Source: Tubulanus polymorphus
Taxonomy: Eukaryota; Animalia; Nemertea
Reading direction: 5' to 3'
Assembly (NCBI RefSeq): GCF_964204645.1
Contig: NC_134032.1
Location: 7,366,275 to 7,430,274 of the forward strand
DNA length: 64,000 nt
The notes below the pieces were generated by a model. It had not been told where the DNA came from. It ran no database searches and was given only the letters and a program-made list of their open reading frames with translations. Positions 22,470 through 44,701 of this stretch are shown here, one piece after another. The position numbers and the translations under genes were made by a program. The stretch's first letter is position 1. Every line of letters begins with the position of its first letter.

Positions 22470-23004
22470 TTATTTTGACGTCGAAACCAGTAAGAAAAGG
22501 GCTAATATTAAACTAGATATTGCCAAAATTGTGTTTATACTATTCGACCGCGAGGTGGCATTACCAGTCGTCGCGGATGCATCCGGGAATCGCGCCGGAG
22601 TTTTGAAAGTATTTCCCGAGCATTTTGTCGCCCACCATTTCTCTACTAACTTCTTCAGTTGCCCATTTCTTCGCATTTCCTTCAACACGAAGTCGAACTT
22701 AGATTTCCACGGAGACAATTTTTGCATCGGTAAAACCAGCGTTTCGTGTTTGAGCGTGTCGATAAGGATTTTGTTGCATGGCTGCTGGCCGGCCCAGTAA
22801 TCTGCCAAGTTGAACTCCATGAACACCGTAGCGTTACCCTGCTCTTCCTCGAGAACAGCGACGGCTTCGTCTGCCGTGCCGAATAGTGGGGAAAACGGCC
22901 GTGTCGTGCGGACTATTTTTCTGTATAGTTGTTTCACGTAGGCGTCTTTGGAATTCTGAAAGAACTTTTCGGTTACGCTGCTTTCAATCAGGCCGGGTAG
23001 AACG
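22470..23004 (-). CDS. Paralog A last exon (S2 lobe + hydrophobic tail)
   Basis: Acceptor tttttag at 23005; encodes VLPGLIESSVTEKFFQNSK...KWWATKC...ILAISSLILALFLLVSTSK*. Confidence 0.9.
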
Positions 23005-26000
23005 CTAAAAAAATCGATAGGAAACAAAAGTATTAAAATCAAATTCGGATGCGATTTTGATTTCAGGAGAGGCTAAGTTTAGACTTGTTTTTCGATGATT
23101 TCAAAATCCAGTTACATAGCTCCGGAGCAGGGTCTGCAGTTTGACGAAAAAAGTAATACGATTTTCACGAAAAAAGCTTACTCAGATCGTTTGTTTTTTT
23201 CAGCCCAAAGACGTTTTCATGAAAATGCACCTTCCGACCATTAAGATCAGTAGTTGGTTCCAGTGTGTGGGATTTTTGGGGGTTTGCACCCGCACCATCC
23301 CCAATAAGGCTGCTGTCAATGCAGATATCACCAAGACTTCGGGAAATGTACCATAGTTGGGTGCACTCATGAAGGGTCGCAGAGCCCTAACCAGTCCCAT
23401 TCCAAAGATAGGGTGAAGTCAAAACATTGGCAGCCATTCTTGGAAATTTTAGGTTTTCTGGATGTATTTTTTCGGACAATTATAAGGGGTTCCAACAGAA
23501 AAAGAAGAGTATTTCCCAGATAAAGCAGCCACGTTTCTTGGCGGCGTTGAAAAGGTCTAAAGAAATGCATCAGAATAGATTCGATTTCCAACCTAGAAGG
23601 TGAGTGTCTAATTTGCAGCAAGTTTCAATAATTTCTGTCTTGACAATAAGTGCACAAATTCAATGCGAAAGCAGGGGTACTGACCCCCACCCCAAAGCCC
23701 AGAGGAAATATTCTGGAGCCATCAAATATTCTATATCCATCAAATATTCTGGGGCCGGATTTTATCATCTAAGCCATAGCAAGAGGCAACCTCCTAGATC
23801 AACACATGCATTGTAAAGCGTCTCAATGACAGTTGAGTTTAGGATTAAGACTGATTACATACCGTTGTTTCAAATCTCTGAATGATTTATATGGTATTTC
23901 CTCTGACCCCGGTTTCCTGTAAACCATCATCACAATACCGCTCTCCATATATGGAGTAGACATTGTCAGCCTGTCTCTAACCAACTGAGAACTGTTAACA
24001 AATATGGCTGCCGCTACATCAGCTTCCTACAAAGAAACAACATACGGATAATTGAAATCTCCCGAAGACACTTTTTAGGAACATATATGGCTGAATATAG
24101 CGATGTATAATCCATTCCACGGAGCCCTTATTAATTACTGCTGCCTGCGTGTGACGTTTTGAACCGTTATTTCGTCAGTAATCAATTGATCCACCTTTAT
24201 TTATGCATCAGTTTGTTCATCAATCTTTGTGTATTCACAAATAAGCTATGATTTCGCATAAACGTGTTTTGCTTTTAGTGATTGTCACCTGGAATAAGCT
24301 CACGTAATTATATCGTGCAGTCTCGCAGTCATCATCAGCCACCATTACCATTCGACCTGATAATGGCTGTTTAGATTCATTTCAATAAGTTCTATCATAC
24401 AAAATTTAAATTTTGGAACTTCTTCTTTTTACACGGATTTACGTGTTTTATTCGGCTACTCGCTCACGTAATGTTGAAAATGGCATTCCGCGTACCATAA
24501 TGTGGCACCAACTACTGTATCATTTTATGCAAACGTTTAGGCGAAAACGTCATAGCTACGTCCCCGAGCGTACGCGGGGCGTTTATGCGAGTATTCTTCT
24601 AGGTAGAAATTCGCTGATAGATGATAATAGATATAAGTTTATCCCAGTTCTAACTTATTTCTGAATGTAAAATCCTTACTGAACAAAACTAATGAATTAC
24701 GTATATTGACAGATCAACTAACTATTAACGAATTTACGGATCGAAACGTCGCACGAAGGGGATGTGTGACGTACTTCGATAACCGAAGTTCGTCTTGTGG
24801 GTCAGGGCGGATCTAAAAAATTGAAGGCAGGAGTCGGAGAAAATATGATTGAGGCATTTTTCAGATAAAGCAGGGTGTCACAGGCTACTATCAGGGTCCC
24901 ATTCAGGTGTAATTAGTCACTTTTGGTAAAACTCATCCGAAAATATGGTATCTTCGATTAGGATGAGTGTCATATTCACAGGTTATAACGATCTTCATCT
25001 TGACGAAAAGGGCAATCACAATGAGAGGGGGGGGGGTCCTACGAACACCCCTAATATAACTCCAACTCTGTGTTTCCAGGCTACAGCTAGTTCGAATTCG
25101 TGAGATTAGTACCCGGTATACGGTCTCTTATCGCGTACCTGTTGCTCCAGTTGACCTAACATACCGGTTAATCGGTTATCGGGTCCGACTTCGCCGTATG
25201 TCTCATCTGGCACTTCTTTCACCTCAAAATCAGCGTCTACAGCCGGGTGACTGGCGATCTCTCTAATCAGTTCGAACAGAAACCCCGTGTATTTATCATT
25301 ACCCCTTTGGGTGTGATCTCTGATCTTCATAAATGGCTCTTCCTACGTAGAAAATAACGATAAGTTTATTAAAAAGCGATACAACAGGATTTTAACAACC
25401 TCGACTTGATTCTCCAATATCAAATAGTAGTAGTTTTCGATAACTAGGGGTCCAGGGACACCATGTCCACTTGGGAAGTGGTTTCAAATGCTCAACAATC
25501 TAACAATTTCAATATTCAATGCCCCCTGGTGACCATATACAAAAACAAAAACCAATGACCTTGAAACTCCCCACAATCATAGAATATGTCAGCAGCTATG
25601 ATTTTGTAATCGATTGTGATAACAAAATATGCTTCGTTACCAAATTAATAAAGAAGTACTAAGTTATTCTTCTATTCAACGCCCGCTGCTGACCATATGG
25701 AAAACCCAATGACCTGGAAACTCACAACAATCATAGAACATGTCATGATCTACAACTTTGCAATCGATCATGGTAACCAAATATCTCTAGGTACCAATCT
25801 AATAAGGAAATACCAAGTTCTTCTACTATTCAACGCCCCCTGGTGACCATATGGAATAACTTATGTCCTTGAAACTCACCACAAACATAGACGATGTCAT
25901 GAGCTACAACTTTGCAATCGATCATAGTAACCAAATATCTCTAGGTACCAATCTAATAAGGAAATACCAAATTCTTCTACTATTCAACGCCCCCTGGTGA

Positions 26001-29000
26001 CCATATGGAATAACTTATGTCCTTGAAACTCACCACAAACATAGACGATGTCATGAGCTACAACTTTGCAATTGATTGTAGTTACAAAATATGTGTAGGT
26101 ACAAATATAATATAGAAATACTAAGTTATTATATTATTCAACGCCCTGGTGACCATATGCAAAACCCAATGACCTTGAAACTCACCACAATCATAGAACA
26201 TGTGATGAACTACAACTTTGCAATGAATCATGGTAACAAAATAGCCCTACGTACCAATCTAAAAAGGAAATGATAAGTTATTCTACTATTCAACGCCCCC
26301 TGGTGACCATATGCAAAACCCAATGACCTTGAAACTCACTACAATCATAGAACATGTCATGAACTACAACTTTGCAATTGATCATGGTAACAAAATATCC
26401 CTAGGTACCAATCTAATAAGGAAATACATAGTTCTTCTACTATTCAACGCCCCCTGGTGACCATATAGAATAACTTATGTCCTCAAAATTCACCACATCA
26501 TAGACGATGCCATGAGCTTCAACTTTGTAATTGATTGTGGTCACAAAATATGCGTAGGTAAAAATATAATATAGAAACACTAAGTTTTTGTATTATTCAA
26601 TGCCCCCTGGTGGCCATATACAAAAACCAATGACCTTGAAACTCACCAAAATCATAGAAAACGTAATGAGCTACAACTTTCCAATACATTGTGGTAACAC
26701 AATATGCTTAGGTATCAATATTATGTGGAAAAACTTTTTCCCATCTACGAATGAGTACTGATGACGCCAAGATGGCTGCCAATTGTGCCATAATTGGATG
26801 ATCAAAAATAAATGTCTCAGGTATAAAACATCCCTTTCCAAAGAAAACCATCACAAATTGCAATGAGAAATGGCAAACCAATAGGATGCTACAGGACTCA
26901 GAATTTGGGCCAAAATTGACATTTTTTCGGCACTAAAAAGGTCATAGGACGGCTATCTTGAGTCCGATCGACCCAATTTTTCTTATGTTGATGGGCCCTT
27001 GGGAGCTACAAATATACACAAACAATCAAGGTTATTGATAAAAGTGTCTTCAAAATTTCCCTCGGAAACTTCGAAAATGTGTAAAAAGTGCTAATATTGG
27101 CGAACAACAATGGCTGCCATCTTGAATCTGATAGGGCCAGTTTTTGGCCTGAAGATGTGTCTAGGGTAGATACATGTATAAACTAAATATCATGACATTA
27201 CCTTGAAGCGTCGTCAAAACTTCCCAAAATAACTGGATTCCGTCTACGGACGAACGGACGACGGACGAAAAGTGAACGCAATAGCCCGCTGGGACTAAAG
27301 TCCCAAGTGGGCTAAAAATGAGATGATTTGACATAAAAATTCTAGTCAGGGGAACTGGTAACGCCACTGTGGCAAGTGAAAATTCAACGATGATACGCCA
27401 TGTTAAGCCTCTCCTTATTAAATTACGTATATATTAAAAGTCGGACGTGCTTTTACGGTTGTGGTGGTTCACAGCTTGGCTTTGTTCTGTAAGGCTGTAC
27501 TTATGTGAACTGTGTGTCTTCCTTTGTACAGTTTGGAGTCTGTCGTCCGGGGTATTCCACTGTGTGTGGAAGTCTGATGTATTGTTGCCTGCTGTGCGCG
27601 GGCTGGAGGGCTGTGTGTGGACTAGAGGTTGTGTGCCTCGCAGGACTGTGTGTCATGTTTGCCTGCTGTGTGCGGGCTGTAGGGCTGTGTGCCCCTGAGT
27701 CTACTGTGTGTAGACTAGAGGCTGTGGTGTGCCTCGCAGGACTGGTGTCCTGTTTGCCTGCTGTGTGCGGGCTGGAGGGCTGTGTGCCCCGGAGTCTGCT
27801 GTGTGTGAGAAACGAATCGTTACGTTTAAAAAAGAAAAAAAAATGATAATAACATCAAGAGTATTAATGAATTATGAATTTTAGGTCAGAGAAAAACTCG
27901 AGAGGTCAAGGTTATTGGTTCTCCATTATCAAAGTGTATTTCGATATTCTACGTTAGTCCCACTATTGTGAGATTTATCGGTCAGAGAGTTCGTCTATTA
28001 TTTCGGTTTTCTGATCTGTTTCGGCGATTTTATTTAGGGCATTTTCGTTTCCATGGAGAGTTTAGTCGCACTCAACGCATGATTAAGTTAGCTCCCCGTT
28101 CGTGCGAGACGCGTGACATATATCCTACATTATAGCTTTATGCGATCCTTTTGACTACTCAGATTTTAGAATGTTTTTTGTTTGTTTATGGCTGGTCAGC
28201 TTCTTATTGCATTTGACACGGATCAGGCTCTGGCCAAAATTGGCCCGTGCCTAATTAGAGAGCGCGTTCACACGCAAACCATTCACTACTAAATTCGATA
28301 CTAGACAATGCTCTTACGAAGCGACCATTTCCGGTGCCAGTTGCTATTCAAACGTAATCATTGTCTGGTGCTAAAATTTGGCTCGGGCCTGGTTCGACGT
28401 TTTTGGTCGGGCCAAACAGGCTGGGGCCCATTTGGCACCCGTGTGAACAGATGGCACGGGCCAAATTTGGCCCGGGTCAAAAATGGTCGTGTGATCGCGG
28501 CTATTGTATTTCACCGTTTTCGAGGTGGAAATAAGTAATAGGGGTTCAGTTGTTCTAGATCAAAGGTCGAACGGTCGAGCTCATAAAAAATGAAAAATAT
28601 GAAAATAATAAAAATTTCTATTTGAATTAGTAGCGAAACTCATAAAAAATGAAAAATAATTCTCGCAAACTCGAATTTCATTTTTACTCGAGTAATTAAC
28701 GAGTTGTTTGAATTGATATTTTAAACATATTTCAATATTTATATTTGTATGAGTTAGATTTTTAAACATAAAAGTGTGGGTAAAGTGTGAGTGAAATAAT
28801 TCATATTTAAAACATTGAATATTTATATTTGAATAAGTTTTAGTAAAAATTTTGTTATCAAAATGAAGAAAGAAGAAGAACCCAACTTTAAAATCGAAAT
28901 GAATTAAACCAATTATTCATTTTCACAGTTTAACATTAAAAATTATATTTCAGCAACAAATTTAGTGTCCGCATGGTATTATAAAATTGAAAATATTACT

Positions 29001-30607
29001 GTAATTAATCAAATATTATCAAATGAAACATATTTAATTACTGAACTAGTAGATACTTTTGATAATGGCGTTAAAAATCCTAAAATGTTCAATACAGTTT
29101 TTAATTTTAAAGGAATAATCAAAATTGAAATAATATAATTGTCTTTTTTCAATTCTTAAGTTAATCAAATCATTATAATCTTTAGAAAGTATTAAATCAT
29201 CATTTCTTTCATTAAAAGGAGTTTTAAGAATATTAATTATGTTTTCATCTAAAGTTCCTTTAAGATTAAAAACTGTATTGAACATTTTAGGATTTTTAAC
29301 GCCATTATCAAAAGTATCTACTAGTTCAGTAATTAAATATGTTTCATTTGATAATATTTGATTAATTACAGTAATATTTTCAATTTTATAATACCTTGCG
29401 GACACTAAATTTGTTGCTGAAATATAATTTTCAATGTTAAACTGTGAAAATGATTTATTGGTTTCATTGATTTCGATTTTAAAGTTGGGTTCTTCTTCTT
29501 TCTTCATTTTGATAACAAAATTTTTATTAAAACTCATTCAAATATAAATATTCAATGTTTTAAATATGAATTATTTCACTCACACTTTACTCACACTTTT
29601 ATGTTTAAAACTCTAACTCATACAAATATAAATATTGAAATTTGTTTAAAATATCAATTCAACTCGTTAATTACTCGTTACTTTTTTAGCGAGTAAAAAA
29701 TGAAAAATAAATTCGAGTGTGCGAGAATTATTTTTCATTTTTTTATGAGTTTCGCTACTAATTCAAATAGAAATTGTTATTATTTTCATATTTTTCATTT
29801 TTCATTAGCTCGACCGTTCGACCTTTGATCTAGAACAACTAAACCCCTATTACTGAAATAGCCGATTTGCAAAGGATTTGAGCGTCCTAACCTGTTGATT
29901 GTCTATGTTGGAATAAAGTTAGATCGTCTATCAGTTTCAATTTGTTGTTTTTGTTGCGTCCTGTTTTCAATTCTCTAGCCGCGGGCCTCTTAGTGTCCGT
30001 TGTCATGGCTTCGTTGTCATGGTTTAGTATACTCCTTTTTAGTTGCTTTTGGGTCACGGTACGATCTTATTTGACGGGCGGTGTGGATTCTATTTTCCGG
30101 TGACGATTGTGATTACTGTTTGGTAACTTTTGAGGGGTAGCTTTTCCTTCCCTCTGGTCATGTTACCGTGGCCGATGATGCTTATAAACCATTGTACGTT
30201 TTTCTTCGAGCGTTCAGGGAAGTTCAGTCCCGTAGGGCTTTTACATGTGTTATCAATATTGCTTCTTTGCGCTTGCTGTTTAGATCTTATGTTCAATTCC
30301 CCTTTATGGTTTGGTTTTGGGTTTTGGGATGTTAGTTTTGGGGTTTTTGCAATGCCTTTTCGGAGTGTTTGGGGCCGTCGGTTGGGTGGCCCCGGTTTTT
30401 TTCCCATATCTATATATTTCTGCAGTATGTCCGCACAACAGGGAGTGAGAATATTATACACATCACTTTGAAATAGTCAAAGTAAGGTCTGCCATCTTTG
30501 TGATGATACAAAAAAACGATGCAACTCTCACGGAAAACTTACTACAATAGTCGTCACTTTGATAATCGGCTTCTTTTTGCCCATATCATCAAGAATAGCC
30601 GCAAATC
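22470..30607 (-). CDS. iGluR-related ligand-binding-domain-only protein, paralog A (S1-S2 fused, no pore, hydrophobic C-tail); 5' exon(s) not located
   Basis: Four GT-AG exons in frame: 30607-30543, 25342-25139, 24026-23863, 23004-22470; about 322 aa. iGluR motifs KVTTIVEEPF, KYTGFLFELI, PDETYG, GMLGQL, EADVAAA, STPYMESGI, KFFQNSK, VFME, QQPC, LVEKWWATKC. Confidence 0.9.
23863..24026 (-). CDS. Paralog A exon containing the S1-S2 junction
   Basis: ctttgtag acceptor, gtatgt donor, 164 nt; EADVAAAIFVNSSQLVRDRLTMSTPYMESGIVMMVYRKPGSEEIPYKSFRDLKQ(R). Not in the ORF track; translated by hand. Confidence 0.9.
25139..25342 (-). CDS. Paralog A S1 exon
   Basis: ctacgtag acceptor, gtacgc donor, 204 nt, phase 0/0; EEPFMKIRDH...TGMLGQLEQQ. 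Confidence 0.9.
25441..27318 (+). mobile_element. Non-autonomous Helentron/HINE-like element carrying a tandem array
   Basis: Starts TAACTAGGGG, has an internal tandem array, a (GGAC/GACG)n tract at about 27247-27268, then terminal hairpin TAGCCCGCTGGGACT-AA-AGTCCCAAGTGGGCTA followed by an A-run. Confidence 0.7.
25515..26725 (+). repeat. Tandem array, about 154-bp unit, about 8 copies
   Basis: TTCAACGCCCCCTGGTGACCATATG-like unit starts at about 25515, 25675, 25829, 25983, 26137, 26289, 26443 and 26596. Confidence 0.95.
27580..27808 (+). repeat. GT-rich degenerate minisatellite
   Basis: Repeated TTGCCTGCTGTGTGCGGGCTGGAGGGCTGTGTG and GACTAGAGG..GCCTCGCAGGACTG units. Confidence 0.85.
28262..28501. 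mobile_element. Small MITE
   Basis: CGCGTTCACACG ... CGTGTGATCGCG inverted termini with internal GGCCCG/CGGGCC repeats. Confidence 0.55.
28534..29854. mobile_element. Non-autonomous Polinton/Maverick-like element (mini-Polinton) with very long TIRs
   Basis: Termini AGTAATAGGGG...CCCCTATTACT; arms about 28534-29115 and 29255-29854 are near-identical inverted copies around a 139-bp spacer. Exact 6-bp TSD GAAATA at 28528-28533 and 29855-29860. AG...CT ends and 6-bp TSDs are Polinton hallmarks. Confidence 0.8.
29046..29537 (-). CDS. AT-rich N/K/I-rich ORF of unknown function inside the mini-Polinton
   Basis: 163 aa open frame in very AT-rich DNA. The mirror copy in the left arm lacks the first ATG and has an early TAA. 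The last about 23 codons read into the opposite arm and are probably not native. Confidence 0.45.
   Translation of the reverse strand: MSFNKNFVIKMKKEEEPNFKIEINETNKSFSQFNIENYISATNLVSARYYKIENITVINQILSNETYLITELVDTFDNGVKNPKMFNTVFNLKGTLDENIINILKTPFNERNDDLILSKDYNDLINLRIEKRQLYYFNFDYSFKIKNCIEHFRIFNAIIKSIY
30543..30607 (-). CDS. Paralog A 65-nt exon (start of LBD)
   Basis: cttttag acceptor, gtaagt donor; (x)FAAILDDMGKKKPIIKVTTIV. Same length and phases as paralog B exon 43505-43569. Confidence 0.85.
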
Positions 30608-32032
30608 CTAAAAGAAAAAATAGAGAATAATTACTTAAATACGGTACATAATTCTAATTTACTCAACGATTAGCCTGCGATTGCCATTTGTAATGTTTCT
30701 AAAGACCATGAATTCAACAATGCAAGGTTCATCCTCTTATACTATTTACATCGGCTTTTAAATGCTTGTACACGCGGGTTAACTCAATTCATGCAGGACT
30801 TAGTCATTGAACTGTTCCATTAGGCAAGACAAGTGCTTCAGTACGTACAGTCTAAGTCCTAAATCTTCAGTACGTACAGTCCTAAGCCTAAGTATTGGTA
30901 ATGTCATAATCCTGGAGCATAGAATGATTACTTCAAGGTATAATATAGTTGTGTAGATGATAGGTTTGGCTATTTGTTTCGTTTAAAATGAGATGGCATG
31001 ACCGGTCTGACGTTCATGGGTCTTCCCCCGACATACATATATATATATACATCCATATAGCTTATATATACGTACAATAGAAATCTCGTTAGAAAATGAA
31101 TTCGGTTATCTGGACTCTCTACCTGAGAGATACATACATGTACACGCACTGCAGGCATGTCACGGTGAACGGTGGAAAAGAAAATACGTTATCGATTTCA
31201 AAATACATTTATATATAAAGTTCATTTTCCACGTAAAACGCAATAGAATCAAACGTTGATCAACGAAATCTGGACACAAAAACGGCACCTGAATTGAACA
31301 ATTGAAATTAGTCTAATGCACGAAGAGAAATGAAAAATACGTCACATTCGTCTAGACGTATATAAAAATTACGTACAACATGTGGTATGACTATGTTATA
31401 TTTTCATATACGCGGTCTATCGTGTGTGTCATATGTCTATAGTATGTGTCATATATACATTGCGTCAATGAATGTTTAGTCGTCTCGTTGCGCAATGTCA
31501 GTACGTACATGCTCGCACGAGTATATGAATTCTACCATCCGAAAATCTTCTAATTCCAAAGAGAACTCAAGATAATTCCTTACAAAACGTTGATTAAATA
31601 GCGTACTGCTATGAAAGGCGAAAACTATACAATCCGGAATTCGCAATCGCTATACTTCGGTGCGTTCTACTTAGTGGAAATGATGACCCCATGAAAATTC
31701 CATTCTCGACCATTCGTAACCAAACGAAAATATCAATCTGACAAATGTCACCTCAGGAAATTCATTACAGTCTATGGAAATAAATCGAAAATACCAACCT
31801 GATAAAAATCTTCAAGAAAGCATAAGAAAATCATAAGAAAATCTGACGTTTCGACTCAATTCTATGAGCTATCTAATTAATTGAACATATGATAATAAAG
31901 AGTCACTTGGAGGTAACTAGGTGATGGCCAACTGCTAGGATGTATACAAGATTTTCTTTCTTCATTTTACTGTGTATTTTTACTTAATTGATATCAGACA
32001 GTCACTCGTGTATGGAACAACCAAACCTGTTT

Positions 32033-32773
32033 TGTTACCGACAGATGTGACTGGTCGGTTTGTAAGAGAAACATTGGCTATTCCTTCTTTTGAAGATCAA
32101 TAGAGCGAAAAATTCAATCTCATAAGATTCCCACAAAGCCATTCACAATAAAACTATATCAATAAAGACTCATCCAATACACCTAGTACTGTTAGTACTG
32201 AACCTGTTATTGCGGGTTATGGTGCAATGTTTACTGCTATAGCAACCAGACGGCTAATCGATATAGTGACGTGTTCTAGATCTATATAAACCAGTACGAA
32301 ACTGCGGTTCAGCGGACTCGACAGACAGCGACTGACAGCGAGCTACCCCACCCGGCTTTAGTCATGATGGAAATTCGTGATTGGAAATGGGTGTTGTCGC
32401 ATTCTTGCAAACCTTCGTCTTACGACCAATAACGCTTACTTCGTATCCTCTCACAGTGTTCGGACTGCGGGAAAATCAACAAAAGGTTCCCTAGTTTAGC
32501 CTTACCGTAGCGGCCCCGCTATCGCCCAGCCACGGGCGCTCAGGGGTTGGTAAGGTCATGACTGGGAGCCGCCTCGAAAAGACGGTCAAATAGTTCGCCT
32601 GGTTTATGAAATATTGCAGCTGTTTACTGTCTATTCGTGGCGGAACCAGTCTTATCTTCATTTACGCTGCACAGTACCGGGACCGATCTAACCATGGATT
32701 AAAGGTAAGTAGCCTAACGCTAGGGGAGATTTTTGGCAATTGATATTGAGTTATTAGACAATGTCGGATAACA
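32033..32773 (+). mobile_element. Probable solo LTR
   Basis: TG...CA ends with inverted termini TGTTACCGACA / TGTCGGATAACA, TATATAAA at about 32283, ATTAAA at about 32698, near-match 4-bp flanks gttt/attt. Confidence 0.5.
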
Positions 32774-35700
32774 ATTTAGCATGGATTTTGTGCCTTCCTT
32801 TTTATCAAAATTCTTCAATTACGGTACTGAAGTCATTTCTTTTTTAAGTTCAAATTTGTACTTGCAATTCAATTTACTGAGTGTAAATCATCATTTGTAA
32901 GTTAACACATTACTGAAGAACTGGAAGTCTTTATTTTTGAGTCGGAAATTGTATTGCAATTCAATTTAGGTATATGAATATAGCTACTGACTTTTGTAAG
33001 TCTAACTGTACAATACAGTTGAAAATTGATTCAGATATATTGTCTAATTTTGCCAGTTGTCAAATCTCCCTGTGGTGGTTGGTAACGGAGCACGGAATTG
33101 GATATCGTGTCTGGACAGGCTGTCTCGTTCGAGGCTGCGAAGTAAGCGTAATTCGGTCGTCAGCGAAAGTTTTAAGTGTCTGGCAACACCCCGGTTCAGT
33201 CGCCGTAATCAGACTCAAGCCATAACTAGTCTGTTAGTTAGCTAGTTGTTCAAAAGTTTGTTAGAGCTACGAGCAATTATCTAACTAGTTAGATAATTGC
33301 TCGTAGGTTAGAGAACTGCTGGGCAAATACCTTGGCCACAACACGACGTCACTATGGTATTTATTCAACAGTAAACAAAACCAACATTTGAGCAACTAAA
33401 CTCCCTTGTTTCACTTGATTGCGATCAAAATTGTAGACGGTTCGTGGGTGTTCATGCGAACCCCTTAAAATTTTCAAAGTGCTCCATTTCGTACGAAATT
33501 TACGTGAAGGGACTGATTCTAGAAAAATCGACTCGAGGTTCTGATAAAAGGCACACAAACTATGGGGATAAAAAGGGCGGCACTAAACACGTAATTTTCG
33601 CGTAAACACGTAATTTCAATGAAATTTTCTTTGCGCCCTATGAAATCATCGTAATCCACGAGCGAAATTGCCTCATTTGCTAAATCCCCTCATTTGCATT
33701 CACGCTGGTAGTCCAAACATGTCCTTTGACGAAGATGAGCTAAGGAGTAGATATTAGATTGGGTATAGAACCGAAATGATCTTAGACTGGTCTTAAGTTG
33801 TTAGATTGGCTACCGAACTAAGTTTGTCTTAGACTGGACGTGTATGTTTTTAGATTGACTATAGAATTATAGGATGGTCTTAAGACTACAGTCTAAAATC
33901 TAAGCCCTGACTGTGCTATTTGGTCTGCCAGACTCGTAAAACCATGGACTATAAAAAGAGATAAGCTTTTCCTACGTTAGGTATTCACAAGGCCTATTTC
34001 CTTAAACAAGAGCATCAGAAAAAGCAAATATTCCAAAAAAACTAACCAGCCATTTGACCACGAAAATATAACAACAGTTTATTAATGATAAACAGACGAT
34101 CACAATCAGACATTAGAAATAAACAGTTACAAATATTCAAATATTTGAATAATAACGGTTTCATTTTTTTGTAAGAATAGCTGTCTCACATGGATGAGGA
34201 GCGAATTGCTGTACATATTGTTGTAGAAGGTCCATCTAGGAAATTATCAAAAACGACTGTAGTACTATTTCTACTTCTACGGACTTTTTTGATTACTTGG
34301 AGTATGGAAAGAGGACAAATAAAGAATGAAAAAATAGATGAACCGGAAGAAAAGAAATAAAATTGTTTTCATTATTTGAGTATTTTCCACAAAAGATTTT
34401 AGAAGGACTGCGGAGTAAAAGGAGTCAAAATTGTATTGAATTGAATTCAAATGATGAAGGAAACGGAGGGAAATTAAGAAGACAAAAGAAAAAAGAATAA
34501 AGAAAAACATTCTTACTCTATTCACCATCATATGGGGGCGGGAATCATGACGAAAACTGCCGCCATGGGTGACTAAAAGATGCTTTCTTTTTAAATTGGC
34601 TATTTTCGTTAGATTCTGAGCAATGTTTGCGAGTGCTCCAAGTAATTAAAAGAAGGCATATTGGTGAAGCAAAAAGTAGGGACAGACAGTTGTTTTTTAG
34701 GTTACGCCTAACTAGTTTCATTTAAGATACTCAGCTGTTGCTACTGTATAGTAGCTTCATCGGGTAAATCAGTAAATGTCAACGGAAAAACGAACACTGT
34801 CAATAGGAAGAGTGCGCTAATTAGAAAATACATACTGAGTAAGTTATGCAACTCATACATTCAGTTATTTCTTCTGGTAACACTAATACATGACGTACAA
34901 TTCATATCTACACAAACTCATTAGATTGATTACGTGATGGGTCTTTTTATGAAAAACAAACGGGTAGGCTAAAATAAAGCTACATACATATATTATATCG
35001 TAAAATACAGATGGCGTTTTTTTCCTAGAAGAGAAAAGAACACGCTGTCATATCAGCTAGTATACACATGATTTAGCAATGTGGTCGTAGCACCTCTAAT
35101 GAAGTTTTGCATGTGTTTTTCATTAAAATCGGAATTAATAAAAAAAGTCGCCAGTAGAAAATTGTTTTGCTGCCGAATTTCAATTTGCGTTTTCTTTCCC
35201 TTGTCTAAGATATCTTGCGCCACCTGAGAGTTTTATGAGGATAAAATCGTAGTTAATTAATACTACACCAACTTGTATCTTTCACACATATATTCATTAT
35301 TAATGCAGATTAAGATTTCTTATAATCAAAATACACCGCAAAAATACGTTAAAACTTAAACTACACGTTTTTGGTGACCCAGAAATAGTGGATAACTTGT
35401 TACAGATTAATCCATTGGCCCTCATAGTTTTTACCAAGCAAACAGTCTTTACGAAGTACCTCATTGAAATAACTTACACTGCATCTTATTGTATTTACAG
35501 TCTCACTAGCTTTTAAGTCATCAGATAAATCGTCAGATAAATCAAGTCGTCTCTATTTTTGGAGTCCCAATTTGTGTTTCTAATTCTATTTACTAAATGA
35601 AAGTCGTTGTTTGGTTAAGACGTAAGATAAATCGTCAAATAAATCAAGTCGTCTCTATTTTTCTAGCCCCAATTTGTGATTCCAACTCAATTTGCTCAAT

Positions 35701-38700
35701 TTGATCATTTTCCAGTCGCCATTTGGATAAAGCGTCACAGTATCGAAGTCTTTATCTATTTTAGTCCCAATTTGTATTTGCAATGGAATTTACTAGGTGT
35801 AAAACGTCATTTGAATAAATCGATAACCAATTACGACAAATTAAGTGAGTGAGTCACTGTATATGCTGAAAATTCAGAAGAAACTGAATTTAAACCCAAG
35901 AATATGTATGTAATTCCACCGGTCTACGGCATCCTAGAAGAACTAAACCAGACTTGAGAAATAATACCTTCTATCAAAATGTATACAAAATTTTCAAATT
36001 CGTTTCGACATTTAAAAAATATACATCATGAAAAGTTCTGAGAACAACCGAAACAAATTCGAAATGTTACGAACTTTAATTGATGCATGAAATGTTCGCT
36101 TTTTTAAAAGGAGTTTTCGAACTCGCAAAACATATTAGTAAAAATGATACGAATGGAATGTAACGCAAACGAATAAATAAATAGATATTGTATAAATATG
36201 ATTTTCAATCGTAGGTCTAACAAGTACTTATAACAGTATCATATACGACAACATTGCGTGTATAAATTCGATAATCAATTAATTAAATAGTGACAGCAAA
36301 TAATAATTTTCTTTTCTTTTCATTATTTACAATTAACAGTTTTGAAAAGAGTCATTAATCGGTTGACGCTCTGAAACTGGGCCTGCGGTCAAAATTGCGA
36401 AATATCCCTTAAGCCCAACGCCACGCGACGCAGGGAAATGGAAGGCGGTATCAAAAATGTTTGATCTCGGAAAAACATTGTTTCCCGAAACCATATTTCT
36501 TATGGAAATGCACACGATACAGGAAAACGCTAAAAACATGCTTCTGTCTTCCTGTTTCCGCGTTTCCCCGCGTCGTGTGCGTAAGTCTTGAATTGTTGGA
36601 TTGGCTCTAAAGCCAAAATGAGATTAGACTGGTCTTAAGTTGTTACATAGGTTATAGTATTAAATAAGTTGGAAATGGCCCTATTATATAAAACTGCCCT
36701 GCTATCACCGCAGTAAGATAATGCCCATATCCTCTACTACTGACTCCGTCAATGAAAATACCCGAATTCTTAAAAACATATCAACGGTCATGTTTTTTTC
36801 TTCTTTCAAATATCATAATGTATATTCGATTTAGTTAACAAACACAGATATGCAAAATCAACGTCTTAATGATCAATAATTAGCTGCACGGGAATAGTTA
36901 TAGCTTATGCCCCCACGAATAACGTCGTGCGTAAAATGTTATGGCCTATGAGTGGCGTCACGCCTTAGAAGTGACGTCACACTCAGAAGTAGTGACGTCA
37001 CTTAAATTACAACATCAGAATATGAATATACAGTCAAAGCGGTTAATTCGTCATTTGGACAAATCGTGTATCTTTTTTAAGGTCATAATTTGTACTTCCA
37101 TTCATTTACGAAGTGTAAGTCATCACTTGGATAAATCGTAACAAAACTGAATTCGTCCAATTTGTTTTGCAATGCAGTTTACTAAAGTGCATGTCATCAT
37201 TTCGATAATTCAATTATAACTTCGACGACTAACGTGCGAATTTTACACCCTACTGTATTTTATACGCGACTGAGTTAGCCAGACAAACAATCAAATAAAT
37301 GTTGAATGCATATCGATTCGACGATGCAAACATTAAAGGTTAAAAAATAGAATAAATTTGATAACAGTTGAATTCGTAACGGTTATAAAATTGTTGTGAC
37401 ATGGATAATTACGTTCACACGGAACAAAAATATCGATAAAATAGAACAACACCCATAAAATTCATTCGTTCTATAAGCGAACTGTTTTTTCAACAATGTC
37501 ATGTGATAAATCTGTACTGAGTAAGTTCTTTAAGTTGTGTTTGAATTCAATAACAATTCTACAAAATGACCATCGATTAAAATTTCAAAAAGGTCAGATT
37601 GTACATTCGTGGCTTAAAATTAAAAAAAAACGGTATCTAACCATCTCTAGACTGGCCTTAAAACTGGTCGATTGGCTGTCAAAACAGTGTAGACTGGTGT
37701 TAAGTTGTTAGATTGGCCATAAACTAACGTCAGCTAAGATCGGTGTTAAAGTTGTAAGATTGGCTATGGAACCTATACAGAGCTTAGAATGGCTCTTCCT
37801 TTGGCCATTGATTTAAGATGGTCCTAGGTTTACGTCATGGCCGTGTGCAACCATCCCTGGCTTCACCCAGTGCTTGAAGTGCTCCTTAATCCTAAGACTA
37901 GTCCCTGATTGGCAGAAGAAATAACAAGGTCTTAAGTCTCTCACCGTTATTATACAACTGACCCTTACTATGTGATAGTTATGCTATACATTTTATCACG
38001 TAGGCCTATCCATTAAATGACCTTGACTTATCCGACCTTTACTGACCTATTTACCGATCACTGGCCAATTGACTGATTTGATTTATTCCTGATTTTTTTA
38101 AATGCGATTTCACGATTATTTTTCGCTGAGAAATTTGAACGAAATCTATTGAGCAAATGATTTACTACTACAAAGTAGGTTTACACAAATCATATTCACA
38201 CATTTCTAACAAAATATGTCAATAAAAATAAATTGAAATATAATCCAATAATGAACAGCAATCCCTAGGACTAAAATGTCAGGCGAAGACGTATTTTTAT
38301 TATGAAGGGAGTATCAATTCTTTTAGTATCAGATGAGTAAAATGAGTATTTTTATACATGAGTAAATACAGAGCATACTGTGGCAAGCGACTTATATGAA
38401 TAGTTATACAAGTATATACAAGTATACCAAATAGCCATATTAACCATTAAGATAGATATCATTCTATTGTTGATAAATATTATTAAACATCATTTATTTA
38501 CTAGTAACTACATCTATCAGAGCTTTATTCGTATTCTAACGATCTACTTTCTTAGAGGTCGCGTTAAAGCTCAATTTTGATGTGAGCGCAGTATTAGATT
38601 TTCTTATGAGAACGCATTTTTCGTCAACTGACTTTCTCTTTCTACGGGAGATCTTGGAAAAATCGCCACGATTTTCAATGAAAAATTAACATTTTCATAA

Positions 38701-40134
38701 TCTATGATGATGAATATAGCTCTATTCGATCACTTCGCGATTGATGGAAATGGTTTTTTTGTGATTTACGGTATGTTAATCGAGCCGTTCTTCGTTGTAA
38801 TAACAGTGTGGCACGTGGCACCATAGTTTTTTTTGCCCTTGAGTGCTGGAGAATTGCCTTACATAGCAACTAAAGATAATCAGGGTATTTATAACCGTCG
38901 AGGGTATATGTCATGTATATCAATTATTGTGTTTGACCACCAATAGAGGGCGGTGCATGTAAACGTCATAGTTTCTTAGCCCGTCAGTGCTGGAGAGTAA
39001 ACATCCATAACAAAAGATAATCATGGGATTTATAGACTTCGAGGGTCTGTCAGTGATTTTTGGTATAGCTGTTAAATGCGTTTAATGGGATGAGATGTTG
39101 TTTCCTATTTACAGTTGGCACATTATCAAAACAACTCACATTCAAAATGTCAATCAATTACGTCGTGTAAAAAATGCAGCTTCTTTCATCGCGATAATAT
39201 CTTTTTGTTCGTAATACCCATTTATTGTTCTACACCTGACTAGTATATATTCCGCGTATTAGAAACACGTGACAAAAATGATAAACTCCATTCGCAGAGG
39301 TTCCTTTTGGTCATTGAAACAAAATGCCTTTTATATATTTCATTTTTTGTGCGGGTTAGTAATTCGTCGAAAAAAGAAAGCTCGGAATGGCAATACCGAT
39401 TGCTACGATTAGAAAGATAAGATAATTGTAATGGCCCCTAATTTATGTTCCCAAAATCGCGGCGGCATTTTTCAGAAATAAAACATTGACCCGGAGTAGG
39501 GAAAAATTTCTCGATTTTTTCTTTGGCGAATAAATCTACTTTAATTGTTATTCAAGAAAACCGAAATGTCCAGGTTTAAGAATCTGACATAACACAGGGA
39601 TTTTCCATTCCCCATCCTCATTTTCAAAGTATTGCCTCAATGTCCAAGACTTGTTTGATCACATGCCCTTAATCTGCCCTTAAATGCCTTCAGTATCCAA
39701 ATTGTAAAAAAAAACTTTTAAAACGTACCACCTAGCAGATTAAAAAGTCGACAGAATGATGCATACAGCTGCTGTGGTACACTTCACCCAGAGCAAAATT
39801 TTCCTGCACAGATCGATCAGTTAAACTTTCGTTTGTGTCGTTTGAGGGAGTCCCCAAAAATGAGGACGGAAAACCCCCGAATGACGTCATCAGCAATATA
39901 CGCAATGTGAATACAATCGAGCTAAGTTGACATGGACATATAAACTAGATATCTAATTTATACATCCGCGGTTAGAGTTAACTCAGAAGTCAGGAACCAG
40001 TTCCATAGTTGGAAGGGTTAAGTTACAGTGTTGTGAGTTAAGAGTTAACTCTGAGTAGAAATCGGTTAATCTCCTATGTAATAACTCAAATCTTAACTCA
40101 CAACACTGTGGAAGTGAGTCCAAGCATCGAGTGC

Positions 40135-40818
40135 TCATTGATGGTTCAATAACCAACAGATGAACACAGTATAGGCGATGCAAAGAGCGGAGGCTGTTAG
40201 GAATCTAGCGGCGCTAGTGTACCGGTTTATAGGTACGTTAAACACCCGCGCAGGGCACTCCGACTTCCACCATTTATCAACCATCGCTTTCAGCTGGCCG
40301 TTAGTCTGTAGCTTCAACAGCGCCCGGTCGAATTTCGCCGTCCAGTTAGACTTTTTCTGAAACGCCAGCGCCAGCGAATCGTTCGACAGGTGATCGATGA
40401 CAACGAGATCGCACGGCTTCTGTCCGACCCAATAATGCGCGAAGTTGTACTCCAAGAACAGCGCGTAGTTGCCCTTCTCGCTACGGACTCTTCTCACCCC
40501 ATCTTCGACCGTCGATACTAGCGGCATATATTGACTACGATCCAGCGCCGTTTGCATCGTTTTAGTTTTTTCGTTTAACTTTTGGATCAACGGATCTTTC
40601 GAGTTCTGGAAGAACTCATCGGCCGATCCGCGCAGGACAAGACCGGGCACAACCTTCGTGAAGTTCACGTCGCGCCATGATGTAATCGGCGGACCGCGTT
40701 TCATGTCGTTGTGGTACATCATCAACACGATTCCGCCGTTCAAATATGGCCGTCCGAAACTGATCGCTTTTTCGTATTTGGCGTTCTTGAAGAAAGCGGC
40801 AGCAGCGACATCTGACGT
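40135..40818 (-). CDS. Paralog B last exon (end of S1 + all of S2 + tail in one exon)
   Basis: cgttgtag acceptor; 684 nt open; TSDVAAAAFFKNAKYEKAISFGRPYLNGGIVLMMYHNDMKRGPPITSWRDV...TVFICWLLNHQ*. Confidence 0.92.
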   Translation of the reverse strand, partial: TSDVAAAAFFKNAKYEKAISFGRPYLNGGIVLMMYHNDMKRGPPITSWRDVNFTKVVPGLVLRGSADEFFQNSKDPLIQKLNEKTKTMQTALDRSQYMPLVSTVEDGVRRVRSEKGNYALFLEYNFAHYWVGQKPCDLVVIDHLSNDSLALAFQKKSNWTAKFDRALLKLQTNGQLKAMVDKWWKSECPARVFNVPINRYTSAARFLTASALCIAYTVFICWLLNHQ

Positions 40819-43569
40819 CTACAACGAGAAATATAGATGAATACAAGTGTTAGAGAGCATTAAACGAATATATGATAATTACGATAATGTGTGAAATTTG
40901 CCACGGGCAATCTGATTGGTGCTTGCGCACCCGGTCTAGTGTGGCTGGGTTTCGTGACTGCTGAGTATAGCGATGCCATCAGGTTTCGAATCCGCACCGG
41001 GGTTTTTTTTTTGTTATGTTTTTGTTAAGCCCTAATCATCAATTTGCGATGCTATCGTATATCTTGCATTTCTTATCTTGCATTATAAAGGCTGTACAAT
41101 CACTATAATCGTTGAGGTCCTTTGGGGGAAAAGTTTAAGCAGTAATCATGCATGAATAACTCAGCAGGAGTTTTTAGTAAAGTTGGACAATATGAATTTC
41201 GATGTACCGTACCCAAAAACAAACAGATAGATAGACATGGACAATCTTTTATGATCTTAACCCCTTATAGTTATTTTCAAATCTCGAAGTATGAAATTAA
41301 GAAGTCAACACAAATAAACCCCAATCAGTCGCTTGTCGGTTCAGGCTGGATTGAAGAGAAATTTCCAATTATGTATTTCGATTTAAACAACAAATTCTGT
41401 AAATTCGACCGGCCACCCGAGTTTGTCTGTACTTCGATTTTCGGTTTCAAAATCAAACCCCTGTTCAGTTCCAGGTGTGACTGGTGGGTTTGTAAGGAAC
41501 ACGAGAAATATGTATTAAATCAGATTAAATCAACCAAATGAATAGTATAGCGACGATCGTGAACTTGACTATATCGAGATAATAAAACACAACACATTGG
41601 AAACGAATGTCAGACACATTACTTCGGATACTTTCTCCGCAGAGCACCGAATGCAACTACTGGTTACCTTATCGACTAATTCGCGGACCATCCCGTTCCA
41701 ATCCCCGCGTGTATCCTGATGTCCGTAATTCCCGTCATATGCCTCCACGAACTCGACGTAAGTGTTGACTTCCGGGTCGGCGGCCAGTCGTTTAACCAGA
41801 TCGAGGAGAAAGCCTTCGAATCGAGCGTTGCCGAATTGCCGAAAGTCCTTGATCATCATGAACGGTTGGACTCCCTGTTGAAATACAAAATCCCAGTTGC
41901 AGCATATAATTTTAAGAAAATCAACTATAAGGAACACGGTTAAGATTATCATCATGAATGCATTGCCAAACCAAACCCAGTATTTACGAGAATGAATAAT
42001 AGTTTTCATACAATTGAATATTTGAAAATACATGTATTTGTAAGATTTTTTTAGACACAAATTGAAAAAGATGACTTCGCAAATGCAATTTTGTTTTTTT
42101 TAGTATCATCTTCTCAATAATCATTAAGAATAACGTCATTACATTAAAACACTTCAAATACAATTCGTCTGAATATACACGCAAGAACCGCCCTCTTATT
42201 TGGAAATTGATTGAATATATAGGATCTTAGCGGACACAGCAGATCTTTCAAAACGAACAATATTGAAAAGCGACAAAAATTGCGACGAAACGGGATGTCC
42301 TGAATTGAGAGAAAAACGAATGCCAGAGATGCACGATAGGCACCAGTACCCTTTTATACCAATGAAGTTTATAGGGAGGCCTTGTTTATTGCAGTTGTTA
42401 TAACCAGTCTTTTTTCAACTGCATATTATTTGCGACGAAGTGTCACCGGCATCATTGTAAGATGCGTCTAGTCTATTGAAAAGGTTATAACGTTTGAGGA
42501 CTAGTAAAGATCTATTCTTATGACATTGAAATGGATCCACATACCCCTAAAAACATGAAATAACTATAATATATTAACTAACACCCAGCGAACATTTCTT
42601 CAAATCTATCATTCCTAATTCTAGGGTGGGGTGATTGCTTTCTACCGTAGCTGCGCACAAAAGATACTAACAGTTTTTGTAGTGAAAACCAAAACCACTG
42701 CTCAAGAAGAAGAAATAGCCTAAACATCGAAAACCATGCGACATAGAGATACATTTTAAAACAGGTTTCGTAGACTGGAGGAATTTTCGTAGCGATGGAA
42801 GGACACTTTGCAAAACTACGAACGCCGCTCGTATCGCTCGTGTGCAATAGGACATCAACTACTGCGGCAATAGAGGATTCCACGACGGTTTTGCAAAATG
42901 GATTTAGTGAGGAGTGGAATGATGAGGAAATGTGACGATGACAATAACGATGATAACATCTTCAACACTATGATAACATTCAATACAATATGTGACCTCA
43001 AGACAACTATATAGGCCAATACTAGACCAAGCTCACAGACGAACACTTAGCTTCCACTTAACACACCGCGGTCCAGTTACACAGTCGTGACTGAAGTCCA
43101 AATATGGTCTGAACTCATAAGCCTGGTCAAAGGTTGTTAGATTGGCTATAGAACCAAAATGAGCTGAGATTGGTCTTAAGTTGTCGGATTGGTTATACAG
43201 CCAAAATGAGCTCAGACTGGTCTCGAGATTGGTTTTAGAACCAAAATACGGTTTTTACACCTTAGTCAAGCTAAGTTTTGTGACTTATATATCACAGAGG
43301 GAATCGGTGAAAATTAGAAGCTTGTGTAAGTCGAAACTAATCATATGCTTCTCTGGCTAAACCGACAAGGAAATCCTCCTCAAACACGAGCCATTATTGT
43401 ATCAGATTAAAGTTCACGACATAATGTAGGCCTGAATGTTCATCATTTGATGTTTTCTAAGGTTGCCCAAGGTCACATGGGGACCGATTGAAAAATTTAC
43501 TTACCGAAGATAAAGTCGTCACCTTAAGCGATTTTTTCTTTTCCATTTCGTACTGCCCAAAAACTACAT
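40135..43569 (-). CDS. iGluR-related ligand-binding-domain-only protein, paralog B (S1-S2 fused, no pore, hydrophobic C-tail); 5' exon(s) not located
   Basis: Three GT-AG exons in frame: 43569-43505, 41874-41668, 40818-40135; about 318 aa. Motifs LKVTT, QPFMM, RFEGFLLDL, DGNYG, WNGMVREL, SDVAAA, FGRPYLNGGI, GSADEFFQNSK, NYALFLEY, QKPCD, MVDKWWKSEC. Confidence 0.92.
41230..41540 (+). repeat. Dispersed repeat, about 310 bp (second copy at about 61980-62310)
   Basis: Shared CCCAATCAGTCG..GGTTCAGGCTG..TTCGATTTAAACAA..TTTCAAAATCAAACCCC in the same orientation. Confidence 0.75.
41668..41874 (-). CDS. Paralog B S1 exon
   Basis: ttcaacag acceptor, gtaacc donor, 207 nt; GVQPFMMIKD...GDWNGMVRELVDK. 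Confidence 0.92.
43505..43569 (-). CDS. Paralog B 65-nt exon (start of LBD)
   Basis: ttttacag acceptor, gtaagt donor; (x)VVFGQYEMEKKKSLKVTTLSS. Confidence 0.85.
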
Positions 43570-44340
43570 CTGTAAAAAGATTGCGCACCTTTCAGTGTCT
43601 CCTCATACAAAAGGTGGCGCGTTGGTATAGACAACAAAAAGTGTACTAGCGAGTGTGTGTGTGTGTGTGTGCATATGTTAGGTGTGCACGTAAGCGCCAT
43701 CTGTAGGAAGACTAAAATACAATTGCCGCGTGAACAGTGTCGACACTTAGCGACAATGTGCCGGAACATCTAAACATTGATGACATTCATGGATTGGTGC
43801 TTTACGGCATCGAGGATACATAGCGTGATTGGAAAACTATTTACAAAAACAAAAAACAAAACGAAAAAAGCATGCCCGCGGATAATAGAATCATCCAGTT
43901 AGATTTTGCGAGAATGTTATTTTTTCGTATCCACATTTCTAGCGTCTCGTTCAATAGAGGCACGGGGTACTTTACCGGGGACGGAGCATTTTTCAGTTAC
44001 TACAGGAAAAGCCTTTTACGTGTAAACAGCAATAAGACAACAGCTAGCATGCTCGAATTCATACTTTGTGACAAAATTAAATTTATAACGAAAACATTAT
44101 CAAATTATTTTGTAAAAAAACCGGAAAAGAAAAGGACGGCAAGTAAGACGTTTTCAACTTTAAAAGTATGATGTGGACTAGAGTCACCCATCCCTACCAT
44201 ACAAATGTCATTTAACACCAGGTATTTTCGGAGACAGAAATTCAGGGCCAAAGGCATTTCAGGTTTCAATGATTCTGAAAACCCTGAAAGTAAACTATTT
44301 TCAACCCAAGAGTTAAACCTTACTCACAGCTGTGGGACCA

Positions 44341-44480: not shown

Positions 44481-44701
44481 AGAGCTATTACACTTTGTCT
44501 AAGAACTTATTTTGTCTAGCACTTAGTTAAACCTAACCCCTGATAAACCAGCATACTCTCCATAGCAAAAAAATACTAACTCACCACTGCGGGTGCCATA
44601 ACGGTGGTTAAATGGATATTTGTGATCAATTTGTGGCCAGCAGGGGACGCCCGCTACAACCTCCTACCTGTCCCACACGATCGCGATGAGACACTCTGGT
44701 T

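What the first reader, a model, noticed from the sequence alone, without database searches (positions are those of the whole stretch)
22470..43569. Tandem pair of natural pore-less 'S1S2' iGluR ligand-binding proteins: a candidate iGluR counterpart of AChBP
Seen: both spliced genes encode a complete iGluR-type ligand-binding clamshell, but the S1 end runs straight into the S2 start inside one exon (A: STPYMESGIVMMVYRKP-GSEE-IPYKSFRDL, 23863-24026; B: RPYLNGGIVLMMYHND-MKRG-PPITSWRDV, inside 40135-40818). Known: in AMPA/kainate receptors the equivalent motifs (SKPFMSLGISIMIKKP and PIESAEDL in GluA2) are separated by M1, the M2 pore loop and M3 (SYTANLAAF); none is present here, and an in-exon junction cannot be a missed exon. 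The layout copies the engineered S1-linker-S2 crystallography constructs. Both frames are intact despite strong divergence, keep the S2 disulfide cysteines (QPC/KPC and KWW..C), and use different linkers, which argues for old, selected genes rather than decay. Inference: a family of non-channel ligand-capture proteins (buffer, decoy, co-receptor or chemosensory presenter), analogous to molluscan acetylcholine-binding protein for Cys-loop receptors. I know of no described metazoan example but cannot search to confirm novelty.
Basis: partly seen in the sequence, partly recalled or inferred. Interest (0 to 1): 0.96.

Follow-up and report, generated by a model that had tools for sequence, protein, structure and literature searches.

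The report
Pore-less glutamate-receptor binding-domain genes
Two neighbouring ribbon-worm genes encode only the ligand-binding clamshell of a glutamate-receptor channel, with the pore cut out and a short membrane-anchor tail, and they belong to a widespread invertebrate family that I could not find described.

Summary
The window is from the nemertean Tubulanus polymorphus. Two minus-strand genes encode an iGluR S1-S2 ligand-binding domain in which the S1 end runs into the S2 start within one exon (A 23863-24026, B 40135-40818). There is no M1, pore loop or M3.

- **Domain and fold:** Pfam finds Lig_chan-Glu_bd and SBP_bac_3 but not Lig_chan. The best PDB sequence hits are the engineered GluA2 S1S2 constructs, aligned straight across their GT linker. 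The AlphaFold model of gene A matches those crystal structures at TM 0.85-0.89.
- **Gene models:** Gene A equals RefSeq XP_074656520, "putative glutamate receptor". Read contigs from two samples confirm the assembly at B's junction.
- **Family:** At least 54 divergent protein clusters share the contiguous junction. Named members come from Capitella, Helobdella, Owenia, Bradysia and a tardigrade. Most carry a signal peptide and a terminal hydrophobic tail that looks like a GPI signal.
- **Selection:** Between A and B, synonymous sites are saturated and non-synonymous sites are not.
A and B are probably membrane-tethered, not soluble. Both lack the conserved ligand arginine. B lies inside A's 57-kb first intron.

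Function and expression of B are untested. Eight literature searches found no description.

The parts
22470..23004 (-). Gene A last exon: most of S2 (QPC, KWW..C), a Ser/Thr-rich spacer, a terminal hydrophobic tail and the stop codon
   Evidence: Translation and AG acceptor; 100% match to RefSeq-derived P0151 residues 164-340
23863..24026 (-). Gene A junction exon: S1 end, GSEE linker and S2 start in one frame
   Evidence: matches P0151 residues 109-165
25139..25342 (-). Gene A S1 exon (EEPF...LEQQ)
   Evidence: Pfam Lig_chan-Glu_bd, E 2.7e-8; boundaries
30543..30607 (-). Gene A exon 2 (65 nt; enters in phase 1, ends in phase 0; ...MGKKKPIIKVTTIV). Exon 1, the signal peptide, is off-window at about 87421-87483
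40135..40818 (-). Gene B last exon: S1 end, MKRG linker, whole S2, KWW..C, terminal hydrophobic tail and stop codon
   Evidence: (SBP_bac_3, E 6e-8)
41668..41874 (-). Gene B S1 exon (GVQPF...RELVDK)
   Evidence: Pfam Lig_chan-Glu_bd, E 6.8e-11; boundaries
43505..43569 (-). Gene B exon 2 (65 nt, the same length and phases as A exon 2; ...MEKKKSLKVTTLSS). Its upstream leader exon is not identified

Best explanation
Genes A and B are real, selected descendants of an AMPA/kainate-like iGluR subunit without an amino-terminal domain. The M1-pore-M3 block was deleted, so the protein is signal peptide, S1, a short linker, S2, and a short C-terminal hydrophobic tail. The tail sits where M4 would be and has almost no cytoplasmic residues after it. 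It most likely serves as a GPI-attachment signal, or otherwise as a minimal single-pass anchor. The product would then be a bilobed clamshell displayed on the cell surface that closes on a small ligand but cannot conduct ions. It would act by holding or presenting a ligand (sensor, buffer or decoy) or by pairing with channel-forming iGluRs.

Shown: the architecture, the fold, membership of a large family, the assembly at B's junction, and purifying selection. Inferred: membrane tethering, ligand binding, and any partner. In A and B the ligand is probably not bound in the canonical amino-acid manner, because the arginine that holds the alpha-carboxylate is replaced. Gene A's signal peptide comes from a leader exon about 57 kb upstream, and B lies in that intron. 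B exon 2 has the same length and phases as A exon 2, so the two genes may share that leader exon by alternative splicing. This last point is a hypothesis.
For: - **Architecture:**
- **Fold:** the model of P0151 has pLDDT 86.6. Foldseek's top hits are GluA2/GluA4 S1S2 crystal structures, with TM by target 0.85-0.89 and rmsd 2.2-2.9 A.
- **Control in the same genome:** P0009/L003 has M1-M3 and M4 followed by a cytoplasmic tail. Of about 25-30 iGluR loci in the genome, only A and B cross the junction in one frame.
- **Family:** the junction insert is bimodal, 0-14 residues in 53 natural rows (54 counting the engineered GluA3 S1S2 construct P0032) and 95-132 residues in 35 channel rows. Named members come from Capitella, Helobdella, Owenia, Bradysia and Paramacrobiotus.
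- **Transcripts in other species:** L007 is a cDNA-type contig with an adaptor, a 5' UTR and a complete coding sequence. One cluster member comes from a marine metatranscriptome catalogue.
- **Gene structure in another phylum:** Owenia has the same terminal exon layout.
- **Tails:** most contiguous members end in small residues after KWW..C followed by a hydrophobic stretch at the very C-terminus.
- **Selection:** between A and B, pS is 0.74 (saturated) and pN is 0.35. The disulfide cysteine is kept in 52 of 53 family members, R485 in 46 of 53 and E705 in 40 of 53.
- **Gene A model:** it equals RefSeq XP_074656520-23.
- **Assembly:** read contigs confirm B's junction.
Against: - No RNA evidence for gene B. 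The three runs that hold it cover the intron next to its last exon as well as the exon itself, so they look like DNA or Hi-C. The one possible RNA run holds none of it.
- B's product did not appear in the representative search, so I could not show that it has a public gene model.
- B's signal peptide has not been found.
- RefSeq isoform X2 of A starts at an internal Met and has no signal peptide.
- A and B lack R485, T480 and P478, so they may not bind a ligand at all.
- The GPI reading rests on inspection only; no GPI predictor was available.
- The species behind most family members are unknown.
Confidence: 0.7

Rival explanations
1. Auxiliary or dominant-negative subunit. The clamshell, with its M4-like tail, pairs with the binding domains or the membrane core of channel-forming iGluRs and modulates them. 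It does not act as a free ligand binder.
For: iGluR binding domains work as back-to-back dimers, and M4 packs against neighbouring subunits (established knowledge). The tail sits at the M4 position. A and B lack the ligand arginine, which fits a non-binding structural role.
Against: Most family members keep R485, T480 and E705, which argues that ligand binding matters in the family. Many members have long mucin-like stalks or no tail at all, which does not fit well with packing into a channel. No complex was predicted or tested.
Confidence: 0.2
2. Decaying relics. A and B are pseudogenes of a channel subunit that lost its pore by deletion.
For: B was absent from the protein search and no RNA evidence was obtained. 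Both pockets are degenerate, and A has a long branch in the tree.
Against: All exons of both genes are open, with intact AG/GT sites and conserved phases. pN (0.35) is far below the saturated pS (0.74). The disulfide cysteines, the WW motif and the core glycines are kept. The same architecture is conserved in annelids. A has a RefSeq model with four isoforms.
Confidence: 0.05
3. Assembly or annotation artefact, or a bacterial solute-binding protein acquired by horizontal transfer.
For: Pfam's best name for the S2 exon is the bacterial family SBP_bac_3. JGI names some relatives as ABC-type substrate-binding proteins.
Against: Independent read contigs match B's junction. The genes are spliced and share an intron position with the channel paralog. 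Lig_chan-Glu_bd, the KWW..C motif and best hits to AMPA-receptor binding domains mark them as animal iGluR derivatives.
Confidence: 0.02

Closest known systems
Engineered GluA2/GluA3/GluA4 S1S2 ligand-binding cores (crystallography constructs, e.g. PDB 1FTJ, 1MM6)
   Same: Same layout, with S1 joined to S2 by a short linker at the same residues. They are the best sequence and fold matches.
   Different: A and B are natural and spliced, with a signal peptide (A) and a C-terminal hydrophobic tail. Sequence identity is about 26%. The ligand arginine and threonine are replaced in A and B.
Acetylcholine-binding protein (AChBP) of molluscs and Capitella
   Same: It is a receptor's extracellular ligand-binding part encoded as a separate gene without the channel, found in spiralians. 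It works as a ligand decoy.
   Different: It belongs to an unrelated fold and superfamily (Cys-loop). AChBP is a secreted soluble pentamer, while A and B probably stay on the membrane. Function is shown for AChBP and not here.
SmGBP, the truncated metabotropic glutamate receptor of Schistosoma mansoni (PMC3206071, seen as title and abstract)
   Same: A glutamate-receptor binding module that has lost its membrane-signalling part, in a spiralian.
   Different: It derives from a class C GPCR Venus-flytrap module, not from an iGluR S1S2 domain.
ATD-less channel iGluRs (Tubulanus P0009; vertebrate kainate-binding proteins, from my own knowledge)
   Same: No amino-terminal domain, the same binding-domain family, and a shared intron before the xADxAAA motif.
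   Different: These keep M1, the pore loop, M3 and M4 with a cytoplasmic tail. A and B have none of M1-M3.
Bacterial periplasmic amino-acid-binding proteins (SBP_bac_3)
   Same: A free-standing bilobed binding protein with no pore, and a Pfam hit.
   Different: A and B carry iGluR-specific features (Lig_chan-Glu_bd, KWW..C, the S2 disulfide). They have introns and group with animal iGluRs.

Membership tests
iGluR ligand-binding domain (S1S2) | Pfam Lig_chan-Glu_bd in S1 | tested here: met
   A scores 34.3 bits and B 42.7 bits; both exceed the 30-bit cutoff.
iGluR ligand-binding domain (S1S2) | Bilobed fold superposable on a solved binding domain | tested here: met
   Gene A model: TM by target 0.85-0.89, rmsd 2.2-2.9 A to GluA2 S1S2.
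iGluR ligand-binding domain (S1S2) | S2 disulfide cysteines and the KWW motif | tested here: met
   The C718 equivalent and WW are present in A and B. KWW is followed by a Cys.
Channel-forming iGluR subunit | M1, pore loop and M3 (SYTANLAAF) between S1 and S2 | tested here: not met
   The junction insert is 1 residue in A and B, against 95-132 in channel relatives. There is no Lig_chan hit.
Channel-forming iGluR subunit | M4 followed by a cytoplasmic C-terminal domain | tested here: not met
   A hydrophobic stretch sits at the M4 position, but only 3-4 residues follow it. P0009 has a tail of more than 30 residues. Homology of the stretch to M4 is not shown.
Amino-acid-binding iGluR pocket | R485, T480 and E705 equivalents | tested here: not met
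   A has L, V, E and B has Y, F, E. The family keeps R in 46/53, T in 28/53 and E in 40/53. The placement in A is uncertain by one or two residues.
GPI-anchored surface protein | N-terminal signal peptide | tested here: inconclusive
   A has one in isoform X1, from an exon outside the window. None has been found for B.
GPI-anchored surface protein | C-terminal signal: small residues, a spacer, then a hydrophobic stretch at the very end | tested here: inconclusive
   The pattern is seen by eye in A, in B and in most family members. No GPI predictor or experiment was available.
AChBP-like soluble receptor decoy | Secreted, with no membrane anchor | tested here: not met
   A and B end in hydrophobic tails. 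Tail-less relatives exist, such as Bradysia P0052, P0123 and P0135.
AChBP-like soluble receptor decoy | Binds the transmitter and lowers its free concentration | not testable with these tools
   This needs binding assays and physiology.

The most novel reading that the evidence does not exclude
An old family of pore-less iGluR binding-domain proteins acts as extracellular small-molecule sensors or decoys. It is widespread in spiralians, where the members are membrane-tethered, and it has independently arisen secreted forms in ecdysozoans. This would be the glutamate-receptor counterpart of AChBP. Receptor surveys would have missed it because they filter on the pore motif. In Tubulanus, one distant leader exon may feed two family members by alternative splicing.
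Probability: 0.45. Interest if true: 0.85.

Novelty: new variant of a known kind. Interest (0 to 1): 0.76.

Why it matters
iGluRs are understood as channels, and their isolated binding domain is known only as a laboratory construct. A natural, conserved version without a pore would show that animals use the clamshell on its own. It would add a new class of candidate amino-acid or metabolite sensors, buffers or receptor modulators in invertebrate nervous and chemosensory systems. It would also supply natural S1-S2 proteins without transmembrane segments, candidates for structural work and for biosensor design. Finally, it shows a blind spot: one published survey discarded sequences lacking SYTANLAAF, so it would have excluded this family by design.

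Tried and rejected
- **Word-index protein search:** the search with exon B found nothing. Its length window and word filter explain this, and the exhaustive search found 751 relatives.
- **RNA evidence for B:** the runs that hold B cover the intron next to its last exon at a similar depth and show Hi-C-like chimeric joints, so they are taken as DNA. The possible 2015 RNA run holds none of B. Expression therefore remains open.
- **RefSeq neighbourhood of A:** Whether B has a RefSeq model is unknown.
- **Signal peptide of A:** it is not in the window. It was found 57 kb upstream of A exon 2, off-window.
- **A second copy of the leader exon for B:** none was found in the genome.
- **dN/dS as a ratio:** rejected as a number because dS is saturated. 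Only the contrast between pN and pS is used.
- **Single origin of pore loss:** not supported. Well-supported branches force at least two changes, and the deep nodes are weak.
- **ESM Atlas look-alikes:** these gave only sub-threshold leads.
- **Literature:** eight full-text searches and five papers gave no description of the family.
- No complex prediction was run, because no specific partner is claimed.

Full report
**What is there**

The window is G000:C8:7366275-7430274 of a 268-Mb assembly. Exact protein look-ups name the organism as the nemertean Tubulanus polymorphus. Two genes lie on the minus strand.

Gene A has these coding exons, all flanked by AG and GT:
- 30543-30607
- 25139-25342
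- 23863-24026
- 22470-23004

Together with one exon outside the window, they reproduce RefSeq XP_074656520.1 exactly. That entry is "putative glutamate receptor isoform X1", 340 aa, stored here as P0151.

Gene B has exons 43505-43569, 41668-41874 and 40135-40818. Each was translated and searched separately by reference.

**The junction**

In A the exon 23863-24026 reads through the S1 end, the four-residue linker GSEE and the S2 start. In B one 227-codon exon holds the S1 end, the linker MKRG, all of S2, KWW..C and a hydrophobic tail.

- **Pfam:** Lig_chan-Glu_bd is found in both S1 exons and SBP_bac_3 in the S2 exons. The channel family Lig_chan is not found.
- **PDB sequence search:** the best matches to exon B are the engineered GluA2 S1S2 constructs. 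The alignment runs without a break across their artificial GT linker (E 4e-19).
- **Control in the same genome:** the nearest paralog is P0009, 496 aa with no amino-terminal domain. It has M1, the pore loop and M3 exactly there, then M4 with a cytoplasmic tail.
- **Profile alignment:** A and B each have 1 inserted residue at the junction, against 122 in P0009.
- **Whole-genome scan:** about 25-30 iGluR loci were found, and only A and B cross the junction in one open frame.
- **Assembly:** contigs of three runs from two samples cover B's junction with no differences, so an assembly deletion is excluded.

**Fold**

I modelled gene A with a 19-row family alignment. The model has mean pLDDT 86.6 and pTM 0.78. 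Foldseek against the PDB returns GluA2 and GluA4 S1S2 crystal structures first. TM-score by target is 0.85-0.89 and rmsd is 2.2-2.9 A over about 270 columns.

**A family, not a one-off**

An exhaustive search with exon B found 751 relatives. I analysed the 150 best representatives, each standing for a cluster at 50% identity. The junction insert among them is sharply bimodal:
- 0-14 residues in 54 rows that include both the S1 end and S2. One of these is an engineered GluA3 construct.
- 95-132 residues in 35 channel rows.

Named pore-less members are:
- four Capitella teleta proteins
- Helobdella robusta HELRODRAFT_167133
- Owenia fusiformis CAH1773235
- Bradysia coprophila XP_037035873
- Paramacrobiotus metropolitanus XP_055338557

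The rest come from unnamed transcript-like contigs of 1-2.5 kb. One of these, L007, starts with a sequencing adaptor and a 5' UTR and carries a complete uninterrupted coding sequence, so it is cDNA. One cluster has a member from a marine metatranscriptome catalogue. The Owenia gene is spliced, and its terminal exon holds the S1 end, S2 and the tail, as in gene B.

**Ends of the proteins**

Full-length members begin with a signal peptide. Most end a few residues after KWW..C with small residues followed by a hydrophobic stretch that reaches the last residues. Some have long Ser/Thr/Pro-rich stalks in between. This is the usual look of a GPI-attachment signal. The stretch also sits where M4 would be, so it may be a remnant of M4. 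No GPI predictor was available, so a minimal transmembrane anchor is equally allowed.

A smaller group has no tail and would be secreted. It includes Bradysia and three unnamed clusters.

**Evolution**

A and B are sister genes (SH-aLRT 97) on long branches, within a part of the tree that holds only pore-less rows, including Capitella members. The pore-less label needs 10 changes on the tree, against 27.9 when labels are shuffled. Well-supported branches force at least two changes. The tail-less Bradysia group nests among channel-type AMPA/kainate-like rows, so pore loss probably happened more than once. The deep nodes are weak, and most rows have no species name.

Between A and B, synonymous sites are saturated (pS 0.74) while non-synonymous sites are not (pN 0.35). 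This means both copies were under protein-level constraint for most of the time since duplication.

**Ligand pocket**

Counts below refer to the 53 natural pore-less rows.

| GluA2 position | Family | Gene A | Gene B |
|---|---|---|---|
| R485 (alpha-carboxylate arginine) | kept in 46 | L | Y |
| T480 | kept in 28 | V | F |
| E705 | kept in 40 | E | E |
| Disulfide cysteine (C718) | kept in 52 | C | C |

These values argue that the family as a whole binds amino-acid-like ligands. A and B differ at the first two positions and also lack the proline at 478. The placement in A is uncertain by one or two residues. Two B-like relatives from other samples keep the arginine. The Tubulanus pair therefore has a remodelled pocket, as many insect IRs do (my own knowledge), or it has lost ligand binding.

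**Gene arrangement**

The signal-peptide exon of A is not in the window. It lies at C8:7453695-7453757, about 57 kb upstream of A exon 2, and ends with a phase-1 GT donor. Gene B therefore sits inside A's first intron on the same strand.

B exon 2 and A exon 2 are both 65 nt. Both are entered in phase 1 and both have eight codons before a Met-x-KKK motif. No second copy of the leader exon exists in the genome. No other family member lies between the leader and B. A shared leader exon that splices to either A or B is therefore plausible, but it is untested.

RefSeq also lists isoform X2 of A, which starts at the internal Met and has no signal peptide.

**What is not shown**

- Expression of B is not shown. 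The three runs that hold B cover the intron next to its last exon at a similar depth and show Hi-C-like chimeric joints, so they are taken as DNA. A possible 2015 RNA run holds none of B.
- B's product did not appear in the exhaustive protein search.
- Ligand binding, the type of anchor and any partner are all inference.

**Literature**

Eight full-text searches and five papers gave no description of iGluR binding-domain proteins without a pore. A major survey states that it discarded sequences with fewer than four conserved residues of SYTANLAAF (PMC6307864), which would have excluded this family by design. The nearest precedents found are AChBP and the truncated metabotropic receptor SmGBP of Schistosoma (PMC3206071).

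**Verdict**

The AChBP analogy holds as a concept. It needs correcting for A and B, which are probably membrane-tethered and have a non-canonical pocket. The sequences are already in public databases as unstudied predictions, and the family appears undescribed.

Noticed in passing
off-window, G000:C8:7453695-7453757 (about window 87421-87483); locus L009:1501-1563: The signal-peptide exon of gene A lies about 57 kb upstream of its exon 2, so gene B sits in A's first intron. B exon 2 mirrors A exon 2 in length (65 nt) and phases, which suggests one leader exon shared by two genes.
   Followed up: partly
window 4967-8102 (-): A non-LTR retrotransposon: a 726-aa ORF with a reverse transcriptase domain (RVT_1, E 1e-35), preceded by ORFs with weak matches to endonuclease families.
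   Followed up: partly
window 8168-9223 (+): A single-exon 351-aa ORF with a weak match to nematode-type serpentine chemoreceptors (7TM_GPCR_Srv, E 1.8e-5, 24.7 bits against a cutoff of 21). It is possibly an orphan GPCR gene next to the retrotransposon.
   Followed up: no
window 42658-43248 and 44234-45218: Read-contig depth is in the thousands here, against about 35 elsewhere, with many loose ends. These are high-copy repeats in the introns and upstream region of gene B.
   Followed up: no
L003 (G000:C1:8911378-8914785) = P0009: The nearest channel-type paralog has no amino-terminal domain. It is 496 aa: signal peptide, binding domain, M1-M4 and a short tail. It is a likely model for the ancestor of the pore-less genes.
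   Followed up: partly
L011:5487-6544: In a B-like relative from another assembly, the S1 end and the S2 start are split by an intron estimated at 100-200 nt, too short to encode M1-M3. The junction therefore need not lie within one exon in every member.
   Followed up: partly
window 29046-29537 (-): An AT-rich 163-aa ORF inside A's intron has no Pfam match. Part of its sequence is repeated on the opposite strand nearby.
   Followed up: no
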